From Eukaryota sp. TZLM1-RC (Eukaryota > Protista > Metamonada: BaSk clade): a DNA stretch of 64,000 nucleotides. The position numbers and the translations under genes are program-made. A model generated the notes under the pieces. The model worked only from the letters and a program-made list of their open reading frames with translations, was not told the origin of the DNA and made no database searches. Shown here in pieces: positions 23,680 through 25,794 of this stretch (its first letter is position 1; each line of letters starts with the position of its first letter). Where the stretch lies: contig JAUPSS010000002.1 of NCBI GenBank assembly GCA_040285825.1, forward strand, positions 2,852,001 through 2,916,000, read 5' to 3'.

Positions 23680-25672
23680 ATGCCGTGTTCCGTCTGCCGG
23701 GCGGCCACCCACAACCGACGTACTTGTCCTCAGAGACAAGTGTCATCACCAGATGATAATGGTTGGATTCCAGAAGCAGTGCACCACCCAAGTACTGGCT
23801 TAAATGAGGGCGAAAGGCCACTCCCAGTTCCAGTTCGCCCGCCACCAGACCCTCTCCCGTCTGCCACAACCACGACTGTGCCTGTAAGCCTCCCAAGATT
23901 CTTTGCCTCTCGTGCTGCTCAAGCTATTGAGGCACAGCTTATTCACTTACGAGATGTTGCTTTCTATGCCACCTTATTGGCAAGAAAGCTTCTATTAGAA
24001 TATCCGCATCTGTCCTGCTGGCTCGCTCACCGTCAATTCTGGTCGCAGTGCTTCGACTGCGTCACCCACAGTCGACCTAAAATTAGGGAGCCTTTCAAGA
24101 GCACTAACCCTGATGTCTATGAGGCTCTTACGCATATGACATCAAGTGCTACCTGGCCGTGGCCTCCGTTAGTAGAGGGCCAAGAACATCCACCCTTTTG
24201 TCAGGCTGCTCTTTTTTAGCAATAGAGCTGTTCAACTCGAATCAGCTCACAGACAGCTGCTGACCGATGGCCCTGTGACCTGGAAACTGAATTTCTTCAG
24301 GTCTATGGGTAAGCAGATGGAGTGTCCTGCTCCATCAAAGTATGCCAGTTGTGTGGTTTCCAGTTCCACAATTTCTGCAAATTTAAGACAATGGTATGAT
24401 GAATATCATTTTCATATTTCCGAAATTTGGAACCAAACAGTAACATCTAATGATTTGTATACGCGTGCCCTGAGGCGTGATGAATTGGATGTCACTGTTT
24501 ATAATTGTTGGTTGATAAGCCATTGGGGATTGGCAATTTTACATCGTCTAGAAAGTACATGCCCAAATGTATTTCGAAGACATGCCTTGTCCCCAATTGC
24601 CACCAAAGTTCCAGGGTTTGTTCCTTTTAATCAACAAGCTCTGGAATATTTCAAAAAATTGAATCCTAACCAACAATTATTACGGAACCCTTTTAAGTTT
24701 TTTAACAAGAAAAAATTTAAAACTTTCTCAATTTCTAGCAATGGACTCTCATTGCGCTTTACTTTTTCAAAGAAACCCAAAAAGACGTGCACCAGGCGAA
24801 AAAATTCTGAAATTCAAGCATTGGGTCAAAGTCGTCCTTATTTCAGAGAGTCCACTAGAAAACGAAATAAGAGAATAAATGGGCGAGCTAACCGACCGAG
24901 GAAAATTGCGAGACGGTCTCAAGATTGCTCGCAGGATCTTCCCATCAGAGAAGACCTTTTTTTCGTGGCGGTTGATCCAAACCATTCAAATTTATGTGGT
25001 TGGACAACTGGACATTGTTCACAAGAGAATAGGGTAATTGTTGAACAATCTGGAATTCTACTGAATCCGAAAGCAAAAGTAATTGATTTTCCCCAGCCAC
25101 TCACTCAATCCTCTGTGAACACTTATTCCGTTGAGAGCTTCAACAGGTATCTCATTGAAATAGCTTCACTGATAAGGAATGATGAGCAGGAAACAATTTC
25201 TTTGGTTTCCCAAACTTTGTCCAATAGTACAGAGAGAATTTTGAGACGAAATAAGTTTGATTTTGTGATAAGAAGACAAAAAAGGTTCATTCATTTTATT
25301 AACAAAATTAAGAGACTAGCTAATAACAGGGAAACTATTATTTGGTTTGGTAATGGTGGTAATGGACCTTCTCGACAATCCACCAAAGCCCCAACTAAGA
25401 AGTTTCTGACAGAAGTAAAGAAATACTTTGCCAATGTGAAGGTTGGAGATGAATACATGACATCTGCCAAAACCAATTGTTGCAAGGTACATCACAGGAA
25501 GGTGTATCATGAAGGCACTCGAAGAATCAATAATGCTTACTTTGAATGTCCTAGATGTGATGAACGCTGGTCTAGAGACATTTCCGCTTCAAGAAATCAG
25601 CTAGAGATTGCGATTTCTGAACATTTTACTGGGATCAGACCAGAGACATTTAGAAGGGAGGTGAGAGAGTGA
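23680..25672 (+). CDS. Fanzor1-type RNA-guided endonuclease (TnpB homolog), ~663 aa after correcting one +1 frameshift at the T6 run 24212-24217
   Basis: RuvC-I FVAVDPNHSN; IIWFGNGG; KAP; rearranged RuvC-II GDEYMTS; Zn residues NCC...CPRC; RuvC-III WSRDISASRN; C-terminal RPETFRR; N-terminal CSVCRAATHNRRTC knuckle. The paralog at 46-48 kb keeps one frame across the frameshift site. Confidence 0.9.
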
Positions 25673-25794
25673 TAGTTGTTTGTATCCATGTATTGCCTTC
25701 GGGCGCTGTGATCCTGAAAAGGAAACCGTATAAGGGAATGGAGGAATGCTACTTGATGTATGCATTTCCGATGAAATTCACAGACTGACTCTCA
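25660..25794 (+). ncRNA. Candidate Fanzor omegaRNA scaffold overlapping the ORF 3' end
   Basis: Hairpins GCC-TTCG-GGC, TCCT-GAAA-AGGA and GGAATGC..GCATTTCC; enclosing stem CTGTGA/TCACAG; basal TGAGAG/CTCTCA. Shares GTGAGA, TAGYTGTTT..ATC.A.GTATT.CC, GGYGCTG and GAAATTC with the other two loci. Boundaries inferred. Confidence 0.65.

What the first reader, a model, noticed from the sequence alone, without database searches (positions are those of the whole stretch)
23680..25794. Near-intact Fanzor RNA-guided nuclease locus with a structured 3' omegaRNA candidate
Seen: two ORFs (23668-24219 and 24275-25672) fuse into one ~663-aa protein if one T is removed from the run at 24212-24217. It carries VAVDPN, WFGNG, DEYMTS, CPRC and WSRD..A..N motifs and is followed by a ~135-nt hairpin-rich region. 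Established: this motif order, with the catalytic Glu shifted to DE.xTS, is characteristic of Fanzor/TnpB RuvC domains, whose omegaRNA lies at the ORF 3' end. Inference: this is a divergent Fanzor1 family (DPN rather than DPG) from a protist, possibly active or easily repaired, and a candidate programmable nuclease.
Basis: partly seen in the sequence, partly recalled or inferred. Interest (0 to 1): 0.9.

Follow-up and report, generated by a model that had tools for sequence, protein, structure and literature searches.

The report
Frameshifted Fanzor1 transposon copy, Skoliomonas
This is one slightly damaged copy of a multi-copy mobile element in the free-living anaerobic protist Skoliomonas that carries a Fanzor1 gene (the eukaryotic relative of CRISPR-Cas12 nucleases). 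It is a new host lineage for a known kind of system, and undamaged sister copies exist elsewhere in the same genome.

Summary
ORFs 23680-24219 and 24218-25672 are the two halves of a 663-aa protein, split by one extra T in the run at 24212-24217; all seven paralogous copies examined have T5. The halves match an intact 663-aa paralog at 657 of 663 residues.

The protein is a Fanzor1:
- Profile chain to SpuFz1, GtFz1 and PpFz1, with E down to 1e-84.
- An AlphaFold model whose seven best PDB matches are all Fanzor1 structures.
- A conserved D/E/D triad with the relocated Glu in DEYMTS.
- "DPN" is not a divergence, because SpuFz1 has it too.

The genome is Skoliomonas litria TZLM1-RC (Metamonada). 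I found no paper that links Fanzor to metamonads.

The element spans 22940-25782/3. Its 3' end (…GAAATTCACAG) is sharp and is conserved across families and three Skoliomonas strains. A 111-nt tail follows the stop codon.

Tails of sister families fold significantly, on the sense strand and with compensatory changes. This family's own tail does not (z about -1.1). No RNA data were available, so the omegaRNA stays a good candidate and is not shown.

Copies form a nested series of 5' truncations with a fixed 3' end and 7-12-bp target duplications right after ATT. The same pattern was described for the Chlamydomonas Fanzor1 elements CRe-1/2/3.

The frameshift may be an assembly error. Other windows of this scan noted Fanzors in this genome before.

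The parts
22930..22939 (+). Left copy of the target-site duplication GACTGACTCT, preceded by ATT (…GGTTATT|GACTGACTCT)
   Evidence: It is a 10-nt exact repeat of 25783-25792 and sits at both junctions (null p about 0.0005).
22940..25783 (+). One 5'-truncated copy (about 2.84 kb) of the family-1 Fanzor1 element
   Evidence: It is 98.8-99.5% identical to L001, L002, L003 and L006 over 22941-25784/8 and to L004, L005 and L007 from 23377/23389. Longer copies extend up to about 1.04 kb further 5'.
22941..23679 (+). 5' non-coding part of the element. About 120 nt just upstream of the ATG are conserved at the DNA level with family 2, so a promoter or 5' UTR is inferred.
   Evidence: blastn 69% over 126 nt and a weak tblastn hit (E about 1e-4). 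No Pfam-bearing ORF lies here.
23680..24219 (+). N-terminal piece of the Fanzor1 ORF (179 aa plus a premature TAG). Codons 3-16 (23686-23727) form a C-X2-C-X4-H-X4-C zinc-knuckle motif, followed by a Pro-rich linker.
   Evidence: Residues 1-58 are disordered in the model and absent from the other families. Pfam gives no hit, so the knuckle is read from the sequence only.
24212..24217 (+). T6 homopolymer that causes the +1 frameshift. The paralogs read at this site have T5.
   Evidence: The read-level check was inconclusive.
24218..25672 (+). C-terminal piece of the Fanzor1 ORF (484 aa plus stop). It holds REC/WED, RuvC-I D (VAVDPN, 24965-24982), the WFGNGG strand (25343-25360), the relocated RuvC-II E (GDEYMTS, 25445-25465), the zinc ribbon (NCCKVHH 25475-25495 and CPRC 25547-25558) and RuvC-III D (WSRDISASRN, 25568-25597).
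25673..25783 (+). 111-nt non-coding 3' tail, the candidate omegaRNA scaffold and the transposon right end. The last ~26 nt (GTATGCATTTCCGATGAAATTCACAG) are conserved across families and strains.
25706..25711 (+). CUGUGA, the 5' strand of the predicted closing stem. It pairs with UCACAG at 25778-25783.
   Evidence: Family 2 has CUGAGAA/UUCUCAG and GEM-RC1 has UGUGGU/ACCACA, which are compensatory changes.
25783..25803 (+). Right copy of the target-site duplication (25783-25792) plus flank. On the OMEGA model this is where the guide would be read from (inferred).
   Evidence: Sequences of all copies diverge exactly here. The guide role is inferred by analogy with SpuFz1 (PMC10432273).
46160..48366 (-). 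Second, degraded Fanzor1 element of family 2. It is about 95% identical to L008, 5'-truncated, has several frameshifts and carries a 116-bp deletion that removes the C-terminal coding end.
15576..15774 (-). Solo 3' end ('ghost') of a family-2-like element. Only the last ~30 codons and the tail remain.
   Evidence: It is 88% identical to L008:4700-4904.

Best explanation
Window 22940-25783 is one copy of a young, multi-copy, non-autonomous transposable element of Skoliomonas litria TZLM1-RC. Its only gene encodes a 663-aa Fanzor1, a TnpB-derived RuvC nuclease that in characterised members is guided by an omegaRNA.

This copy is 5'-truncated, and its ORF is split by one extra T in a T-run. That T is either a real lesion or a homopolymer assembly error. 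The 663-aa ORF is uninterrupted in only two of the eight copies fetched (L002, L003); several others are also broken. The family as a whole looks recently active.

Inferred mechanism:
- Transcription runs on into the flank, which supplies the guide.
- The Fanzor RNP then recognises the unoccupied insertion site. There the target motif ATT sits directly 5' of the guide-matching sequence, so ATT is the predicted TAM-like motif.
- Cleavage uses D (VAVDPN), E (DEYMTS) and D (WSRD).

The element itself is spread by a trans-acting enzyme that recognises the conserved 3' terminus. Spread proceeds by a one-ended process that starts at the 3' end, often stops short of the 5' end, and leaves 7-12-bp target duplications right after ATT. 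This is the pattern described for the Helitron2-related Fanzor1 elements of Chlamydomonas.

My odds:
- Fanzor1 element, multi-copy and mobile: about 0.95.
- Tail is the omegaRNA scaffold: about 0.6.
- Rolling-circle, Helitron-like mobilisation rather than another one-ended route: about 0.45.
For: **Identity**
- Organism: close paralogs are all NCBI proteins of Eukaryota sp. TZLM1-RC, which is Skoliomonas (PMC11316075).
- Fanzor1: the Skoliomonas-only profile against non-Skoliomonas relatives gives hhalign 99.9%, E = 4e-34, over 536 columns.
- Those relatives alone hit SpuFz1 8gkh at E = 3e-84, PpFz1 at 1e-61 and GtFz1 at 7e-59, over the full length.
- The joint profile gives 3e-75, 6e-57 and 9e-54, whereas Fanzor2, TnpB and Cas12f match only the last ~60 residues.
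- The AlphaFold model has pLDDT 80.4. Foldseek ranks 1-7 are all Fanzor1 structures, E 3e-13 to 1.5e-9, TM 0.43-0.57.
- D432, E591 and D633 are nearly invariant in 30 sequences.

**Multi-copy and young**
- The 90% protein cluster has 17 members.
- Eight DNA copies are 98-99.5% identical, and two have intact ORFs.

**Right end**
- All copies diverge at …CACAG|, and read contigs branch there.
- The terminal ~26 nt are conserved in five families from three strains.

**RNA structure**
- Tails of four sister families fold with z = -2.8 to -4.4.
- The sense strand is 6-20 kcal/mol more stable than the antisense, with 27/192 against 3/155 G·U pairs.
- The terminal nucleotides pair with an upstream segment in most families (combined p about 0.003), with compensatory changes.

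**Mobility**
- There is a strict nested series of 5' ends with one 3' end.
- TSDs are significant in 5 of 12 copies, and four of them follow ATT.
- The precedent is CRe-1/2/3 (PMC3627910).
Against: - No expression data exist for the tail: no RNA run was served, and Rfam has no match.
- This family's own tail is not more stable than shuffled sequence.
- The Skoliomonas-only profile finds no solved Fanzor by sequence, and Pfam PF07282 is below its gathering score for this protein (21.8 against 26.3). Membership therefore rests on intermediate sequences and on a model built with them.
- No transposase, Helitron Rep/helicase or matching left inverted repeat was found in the fetched flanks.
- The Helitron2-type asymmetric inverted-repeat test was marginal or negative (p 0.05 and 0.39).
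- Seven of twelve copies show no clear TSD.
- The conserved terminal stem could serve DNA-level recognition by a transposase rather than an RNA.
Confidence: 0.85

Rival explanations
1. The copy in the window is not broken. The extra T is a Nanopore homopolymer error that polishing failed to remove inside a repeat, so the window holds a third intact 663-aa Fanzor1 gene.
For: - The lesion is a single T6-versus-T5 difference in a homopolymer.
- Apart from it, the protein differs from an intact paralog at 6 of 663 residues.
- The assembly is R9.4 Nanopore with Illumina correction.
- The only contig crossing the site in run X1 has T5, and in X2 the contigs break exactly at 24216/24220.
Against: - The T5 contig can come from any of the paralogs, because contigs collapse repeats.
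- Four of the seven other copies examined carry real disabling lesions, so decay of single copies is common.
- Nothing positively shows T5 linked to this locus's unique flanks.
Confidence: 0.35
2. The conserved 3' tail is only the transposon end, a DNA or single-stranded-DNA recognition structure for the mobilising enzyme such as a Helitron-type 3' hairpin. It is not an omegaRNA. The Fanzor protein either uses an RNA encoded elsewhere or is no longer RNA-guided.
For: - The most conserved part is the terminal ~26 nt, which an ORF-less 250-bp repeat also carries.
- One-ended transposition needs a recognised 3' end (PMC3627910).
- This family's tail is not significantly structured.
Against: - The structure is strand-asymmetric and rich in G·U pairs on the sense strand. 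A duplex DNA signal would not need that.
- In every Fanzor and TnpB tested so far the guide RNA comes from exactly this place (PMC10432273; PMC10530073).
- The two roles are not exclusive. In Spu-1 the right inverted repeat lies inside the scaffold.
Confidence: 0.25
3. The elements spread through an RNA intermediate. A non-LTR retrotransposon's reverse transcriptase recognises the structured 3' tail (the stringent LINE/SINE relationship) and copies Fanzor transcripts by target-primed reverse transcription. This would give 5' truncations and variable TSDs.
For: - Nested 5' truncations share one 3' end.
- TSDs of variable length have a fixed motif at their left edge.
- The sense-strand 3' tail is structured.
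- A short ORF-less repeat shares only the tail end.
- The ORF is intronless, and family 1 has an N-terminal CCHC knuckle.
- RT genes exist in the genome (RVT_1 in L001).
Against: - There is no poly(A) or simple-repeat tail at the 3' junction.
- No RT-bearing element with this tail was found in the DNA I could reach.
- The identical pattern has a published DNA-level explanation for Fanzor1 elements (PMC3627910).
- An omegaRNA or mRNA would be expected to run past the right end, yet copies end precisely at it.
Confidence: 0.12

Closest known systems
SpuFz1 / Spu-1 elements of Spizellomyces punctatus (Fanzor1; PDB 8GKH; PMC10432273)
   Same: - Single-ORF element of about 2-3 kb in tens of copies, some intact.
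- Protein of about 640-660 aa with the same domain order and the same active-site signatures: IDPN, DEY.TS, a zinc ribbon and W.RD.
- Best fold and profile match.
[quoted passage not shown]
- ORF-less 'ghost' elements that share the right end.
   Different: - Only about 12-13% identity in the structural alignment.
- The Skoliomonas elements have no 30-nt terminal inverted repeats.
- They show nested 5' truncations with variable TSDs.
- The tail is 111 nt, not about 80 nt.
- Family 1 adds an N-terminal CCHC knuckle and a Pro-rich linker.
- The omegaRNA, TAM and cleavage are shown for SpuFz1 and untested here.
CRe-1/2/3 Fanzor1 elements of Chlamydomonas reinhardtii (non-autonomous Helitron2-related; Bao and Jurka 2013, PMC3627910)
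   Same: - Fanzor1-only elements with nearly always intact 3' ends, frequent 5' truncation and internal deletions.
- TSDs of variable length (7-19 bp there, 7-12 bp here) placed immediately after a fixed short target motif (TTTT there, ATT here).
- Occasional extra nucleotides at the 5' junction.
- A 3' terminus shared with shorter ORF-less elements.
   Different: - In Chlamydomonas the link to verified Helitrons with Rep/helicase is shown by shared ends. Here no autonomous partner was found.
- The asymmetric inverted-repeat test was not convincing.
- The CRe genes have 5-10 exons, whereas these are intronless.
- The terminus here is …CACAG.
ISDra2 TnpB and other prokaryotic TnpB (IS200/IS605, IS607)
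   Same: - RuvC plus zinc-ribbon core.
- The guide RNA is encoded at the 3' end of the gene and runs over the right end.
- The TAM equals the transposon's target motif, which is the logic I borrow for the ATT prediction.
   Different: - TnpB is about 400 aa and has the canonical Glu position.
- Only the last 50-60 residues align (E 0.006-3e-7).
- Foldseek TM is about 0.2.
- There is no TnpA here.

Membership tests
Fanzor1 | Full-length sequence homology to experimentally characterised Fanzor1 proteins (SpuFz1, GtFz1, PpFz1) | tested here: met
   The link is transitive. Skoliomonas profile A1 against non-Skoliomonas relatives A4 gives hhalign 99.9%, E 4e-34, 536 columns. A4 against PDB gives 8gkh 3e-84, 9cf0 1e-61 and 9cer 7e-59. 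The joint profile A2 gives 3e-75, 6e-57 and 9e-54. Caveat: A1 alone finds no solved Fanzor.
Fanzor1 | Fanzor1 fold (WED/REC/RuvC/zinc-ribbon lobes) closer to Fanzor1 than to TnpB or Cas12 | tested here: met
   The model of intact paralog P0017 has pLDDT 80.4 and pTM 0.74. Foldseek ranks 1-7 are PpFz, SpuFz and GtFz (E 3e-13 to 1.5e-9, TM 0.43-0.57). The next match is Cas12g at 9e-5, TM 0.25.
Fanzor1 | RuvC D-E-D triad with the Glu relocated next to the zinc ribbon (DE..TS) instead of after the second RuvC strand | tested here: met
   D in VAVDPN, no Glu in WFGNGG, E in GDEYMTS and D in WSRDISAS. D432, E591 and D633 are at least 90% conserved in 30 sequences. They align to SpuFz1 IDPN, DEYKTS and WNRD. 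Saito et al. name D383, N385, E541 and D606.
Fanzor1 | Cas12f1-like TNB / OrfB zinc-ribbon domain (PF07282) | tested here: inconclusive
   This protein scores E 2e-4, 21.8 bits, against a gathering score of 26.3. All 9 family members hit at E <= 0.01. Outside relatives score 28-40 bits, above the cut-off. C601, C623 and C626 are invariant, but the first CxxC is replaced by CCKVHH.
Fanzor1 | OmegaRNA encoded at the 3' end of the ORF, with a scaffold ending at the right end and the guide read from the flank | tested here: inconclusive
   Position, sharp right end, cross-family conserved terminus, sense-strand structure and compensatory pairs all fit. There are no RNA reads and no Rfam family, and this family's tail has z = -1.1.
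Fanzor1 | RNA-guided, TAM-dependent double-strand DNA cleavage | not testable with these tools
   This needs biochemistry. ATT as the TAM is a prediction from the insertion sites.
Fanzor2 | TnpB-sized protein with full-length similarity to ApmFz2 or NlovFz2, in IS607-type elements | tested here: not met
   ApmFz2 (9b0l, 'TnpB-like protein L79') matches only ~65 C-terminal residues at E 2.7e-9. The protein is 663 aa, and no serine recombinase lies in the flanks.
Prokaryotic TnpB | About 400 aa, canonical RuvC-II Glu, partner TnpA, prokaryotic host | tested here: not met
   Only the last 50-60 residues align. The Glu is relocated. The host is a eukaryote with neighbouring eukaryotic genes.
One-ended, Helitron2-related Fanzor1 elements (CRe-like) | Intact 3' ends with nested 5' truncations and internal deletions | tested here: met
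   The 5' ends fall at L003 coordinates 1226, 1680, 1989, 2262 (window), 2698 and 2710, all with the same 3' end. Internal deletions occur in L007 (about 55 nt) and in the window's second copy (116 nt).
One-ended, Helitron2-related Fanzor1 elements (CRe-like) | Variable-length TSDs that start right after a fixed short target motif | tested here: met
   The TSDs are GACTGACTCT (window), GTGAAAACTT (L007), GTTGTGGTCTTA (L004), (T)GAAGGGTG (L001) and GTAGCAG (L009), with p from 0.0005 to 0.04. Four of the five follow ATT. Seven other copies have no clear TSD.
One-ended, Helitron2-related Fanzor1 elements (CRe-like) | Termini shared with a verified autonomous Helitron (Rep/helicase), asymmetric terminal inverted repeats, 3' hairpin | tested here: inconclusive
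   No Rep/helicase lies in about 160 kb of fetched DNA. The 5'-end against 3'-tail inverted match gives p 0.05 (family 1) and 0.39 (family 2). Only an ORF-less 250-bp repeat shares the terminus. The whole genome could not be searched.
Non-LTR (LINE/SINE-type) retroposed sequence | 3' poly(A) or simple-repeat tail, and an RT partner with the same tail | tested here: not met
   All copies end at …CACAG and are followed directly by unique flank. No RT element with this tail occurs in the fetched DNA. The 5' truncations and TSDs alone do not discriminate.

The most novel reading that the evidence does not exclude
The Skoliomonas Fanzor1 elements are copied through RNA. The structured sense-strand 3' tail serves both as omegaRNA scaffold and as the recognition tail for a reverse transcriptase acting in trans, and the CCHC knuckle of family 1 acts as a Gag/ORF1-like RNA binder. 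That would make this the first OMEGA-type nuclease carried by a retroposon. Its insertions would be biased to ATT|G sites a few to a few tens of nucleotides upstream of host genes in the same orientation.
Probability: 0.1. Interest if true: 0.85.

Novelty: new member of a known kind. Interest (0 to 1): 0.45.

Why it matters
Fanzors are the only known eukaryotic RNA-guided DNA nucleases and are being developed as compact genome editors. This locus belongs to a divergent Fanzor1 clade found in three Skoliomonas strains (Metamonada). The papers I could search do not link that supergroup to Fanzors, and GenBank labels these proteins only as 'hypothetical'.

The clade is young and multi-copy, with intact 663-aa genes and a sharply defined right end. 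That gives a concrete protein, scaffold and predicted TAM (ATT) to test.

The elements also reproduce the odd 'one-ended transposition with TSDs' first seen in Chlamydomonas Fanzor1 elements, now in a very distant host. This makes it more likely that the behaviour belongs to the Fanzor1 element type rather than to one alga. It also offers a small 32-Mb genome in which to find the mobilising enzyme and to ask what Fanzor does for its element.

None of this overturns current views. It extends a known system to a new lineage.

Tried and rejected
- **Rfam**, E-value mode, over 22500-26300: no match.
- **Pfam** on ORF1: nothing. On ORF2: only PF07282, below its cut-off.
- **PDB by sequence**: phmmer of ORF2 gave a weak TnpB hit only (E 0.32). 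The Skoliomonas-only profile gave no significant hit, so homology had to be bridged through metagenomic relatives.
- **Left inverted repeat**: a search for one matching the right end found none within 2.5-4 kb upstream of any copy. A Spu-1-like or other TIR transposon structure is therefore rejected for the DNA seen.
- **Helitron2-type asymmetric inverted repeat**: marginal or negative.
- **Tc1/mariner-type TA flanks and hAT-type ends for the Fanzor element**: considered and rejected from the junction sequences. A separate hAT-like insert does split the tail of L004.
- **Minus-strand 'genes' annotated upstream of the Fanzor ORFs**: short, low-complexity, not conserved between families. Treated as mispredictions.
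- **Transposase or RT in the window**: Pfam on ten long ORFs found host genes only.
- **Sequencing runs**: only Logan contigs, none on record as RNA. The frameshift check was inconclusive and there is no expression evidence.
- **Scans of viral contigs and JGI metagenome contigs** with the family profile: no relatives.
- **Folding energy of this family's tail**: not significant.
- **Complex prediction**: not used, because no protein-protein claim is made.

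Full report
**1. The observation**

ORFs 23668-24219 and 24275-25672 on the + strand are as described. The second frame is open from 24218.
- The first piece reads …QAALF-stop. The second begins SNRAVQLESAHRQLLTDGPVTWKL.
- In paralogous copies the same text is continuous. The only difference at the junction is T5 instead of the window's T6 at 24212-24217.
- From the ATG at 23680 the two pieces are 179 + 484 = 663 aa. They match the intact 663-aa paralog P0028 at 657 of 663 positions.

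**2. The organism**

The closest proteins are all 'hypothetical protein P9112_…' of Eukaryota sp. TZLM1-RC, assembly GCA_040285825.1.
- This strain is Skoliomonas litria, a free-living haloalkaliphilic anaerobe of Metamonada (PMC11316075).
- Its 31.9-Mb genome was assembled from Nanopore R9.4 reads and corrected with Illumina reads.
- The genome paper mentions neither Fanzor nor TnpB.
- No paper in the searchable library holds 'Fanzor' together with a metamonad term.

**3. What the protein is**

On its own the protein is hard to place.
- Pfam gives only PF07282 (Cas12f1-like TNB), below its cut-off.
- A profile of nine Skoliomonas homologs finds nothing significant in the PDB.

An exhaustive profile search against 1.84 billion representatives found 238 relatives. 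These include 580-860-aa proteins from metagenomes that all carry PF07282 above threshold. The chain of evidence then closes:
- Skoliomonas-only profile against a profile of those outside relatives: hhalign 99.9%, E = 4e-34, over 536 columns (residues 61-661).
- The outside relatives alone match SpuFz1 (8GKH) at E = 3e-84, PpFz1 at 1e-61 and GtFz1 at 7e-59, over their whole length.
- Fanzor2 (ApmFz2), TnpB, Cas12f and LaTranC align only over the last ~60 residues.
- An AlphaFold2 model of the intact paralog P0017 has mean pLDDT 80.4. Its low-confidence stretches are residues 1-58, the basic stretch 385-418 and 563-568.
- The seven best Foldseek matches in the PDB are all Fanzor1 structures (E 3e-13 to 1.5e-9, TM 0.43-0.57). 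Cas12g follows at 9e-5.
- D432, E591 and D633 are nearly invariant across 30 sequences.
- These residues align with SpuFz1's IDPN, DEYKTS and WNRD, whose D383, N385, E541 and D606 hold the two magnesium ions (PMC10432273).

The protein is therefore a Fanzor1.

Family 1 alone has an extra N-terminus with a C-X2-C-X4-H-X4-C knuckle and a Pro-rich linker. This is read from the sequence only, because Pfam gives no hit.

**4. The element**

Seven further family-1 copies were fetched (L001-L007).
- The window is 98-99.5% identical to them from 22941, or from 23377/23389 for three of them, to 25783/4.
- The 3' boundary is sharp. Every copy reads …GATGAAATTCACAG and then diverges, and contigs of public runs branch at the same base.
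- The 5' boundaries form a strict nested series. In L003 coordinates they are 1226, 1680, 1989, 2262 (window), 2698 and 2710.
- Two of the eight copies keep an intact 663-aa ORF. The others carry different lesions.

A second family (about 48% protein identity; L008, L009) has the same build.
- In the window it is represented by a degraded copy at 48366-46160 (-) and a solo 3' end at 15774-15576 (-).
- Further families occur in TZLM1-RC (L010), TZLM3-RCL (L012) and GEM-RC1 (L011).

**5. How it moves**

- No inverted copy of the right end exists upstream of any copy.
- No transposase or RT lies in the flanks or in the window.
- Five of twelve copies are flanked by significant direct repeats of 7-12 bp: window GACTGACTCT at 22930-22939 and 25783-25792, plus L001, L004, L007 and L009.
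- In four of these five the left repeat follows ATT directly.

Fixed 3' end, nested 5' truncation, internal deletions, variable TSDs after a fixed short motif, occasional extra bases at the 5' junction, and short ORF-less repeats sharing only the 3' terminus together match what Bao and Jurka described for CRe-1/2/3 of Chlamydomonas. They explained it as one-ended rolling-circle transposition of non-autonomous Helitron2 elements (PMC3627910).

I adopt that as the most likely route, at about 0.45. The autonomous partner was not found, and the asymmetric-inverted-repeat test was weak. Target-primed reverse transcription would give the same footprints and is not excluded. The absence of a poly(A) or repeat tail, and of any RT element with this terminus, argues against it.

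**6. The omegaRNA candidate**

- The tail between stop and right end is 111 nt (25673-25783), against about 80 nt in SpuFz1. There a 75-nt scaffold spans the right inverted repeat and is followed by a 14-15-nt guide from the flank.
- By energy this family's tail is unremarkable (z -0.7 to -1.2).
- The tails of families 2 and 3, GEM-RC1 and TZLM3-RCL are significantly stable (z -2.8 to -4.4).
- Four families share a layout: a 5' hairpin, then a domain closed by pairing of the last 4-7 nt of the element with a segment 47-83 nt from the end.
- The closing helix changes in a compensatory way: CUGUGA/UCACAG, CUGAGAA/UUCUCAG, UGUGGU/ACCACA. Across six tails the pairing beats shuffles with a combined p of about 0.003.
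- The last ~26 nt are the only part alignable across all families.
- Sense strands fold 6-20 kcal/mol better than antisense strands and use 27/192 G·U pairs against 3/155. This points to a sense-strand RNA rather than a duplex DNA signal.
- No RNA run was available and Rfam has no family.

I put the omegaRNA reading at about 0.6. It is compatible with the same sequence also being the transposition end.

On the OMEGA logic, the guide would start at or next to 25783/4. In the empty site it would be preceded by ATT, which is my predicted TAM-like motif (inference).

**7. The frameshift**

Only Logan contigs could be laid on the region.
- One contig of run X1 crosses the site with T5, but it may derive from paralogs.
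- In run X2 the contigs stop at 24216 and restart at 24220.

Given the assembly method, an artefact is plausible, at about 0.35. Either way intact copies exist, so the question matters little for the family.

**8. Verdict**

- It is a new member (a divergent clade in a new supergroup) of a known kind of system, carried by an element whose behaviour has a published precedent.
- Other windows of this scan had already noted Fanzor loci elsewhere in this genome. I tested several of those leads here.

Noticed in passing
L002:5104-5143, L004:5682-5694, L005:5901-5954, L006:5105-5145, L008:4908-4936, L009:4983-5052, L010:4573-4584, L012:4385-4390: In 8 of 13 loci the Fanzor right end lies about 5-70 nt upstream of the annotated start of a host gene on the same strand (Ras/Arf, CAF1A, SET, VPS51, PDCD2_C, TPR and others). 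In L004 the annotated start lies inside the right end. This may be a real promoter-proximal, oriented insertion bias. It may also be a side effect of repeat masking before gene prediction in a compact genome. It needs a genome-wide control.
   Followed up: partly
L004:1985-2237; L005:2345-2593; L001:7640-7892 (-); L008:82-334: An ORF-less repeat of about 250 bp ends in …GTGAATTTCACAGGGGAATGTATGATAAGTGAAATTCACAG, the same terminus as the Fanzor right end. This is analogous to the 'ghost' elements of Spizellomyces, or to the short non-autonomous partners of CRe elements.
   Followed up: partly
L004:5086-5677: The 3' tail of the L004 Fanzor copy is split by an insert of about 590 bp with inverted ends CAGTGTTAGAATT…AATTCTAACATTG and an 8-bp duplication C[C/T]GATGAA. 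This is a hAT-like footprint, so another DNA transposon family is or was active in this genome.
   Followed up: no
window 25792-26205 (-): A 137-aa ORF with an FTSPPF motif and weak class-I methyltransferase hits (Pfam E 0.03-0.1). Its stop codon overlaps the last base of the right TSD copy, so the Fanzor element landed immediately 3' of it. On the OMEGA model the guide of this copy would be read from this ORF's 3' end.
   Followed up: partly
window 22800-25950, run X3 (organism B, same study): A run labelled as a different organism of the same study holds pieces of the family-1 element at 100% identity but low depth (for example 25436-25784). No >90% protein of this family is annotated outside TZLM1-RC. 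This could be carry-over between libraries or very recent sharing.
   Followed up: no
L009:1517-2128 (-): A 203-aa ORF with a SWIM-like CxC…CxH motif (…KKCSCNGWQNDGYPCTPS…), possibly the tail of a MULE-type transposase. It lies just outside the left end of the family-2 Fanzor element.
   Followed up: no
L001:8798-9906 (-), next to an RVT_1 gene at L001:9949-9993: Two tandem paralogous ORFs (210 and 176 aa) lie downstream of a reverse-transcriptase gene. The same repeat occurs in the window at about 13338-14043 and 41778-42212. It is possibly the endonuclease part of a non-LTR element. This is untested.
   Followed up: no
window 23560-23680 and L009:2864-2979: About 120 nt just upstream of the Fanzor start codon are conserved between families 1 and 2 (69% DNA identity, shared …TCATTTCTGATTGT…), although the rest of the 5' regions is unrelated. 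This is a candidate promoter or 5' UTR element.
   Followed up: partly
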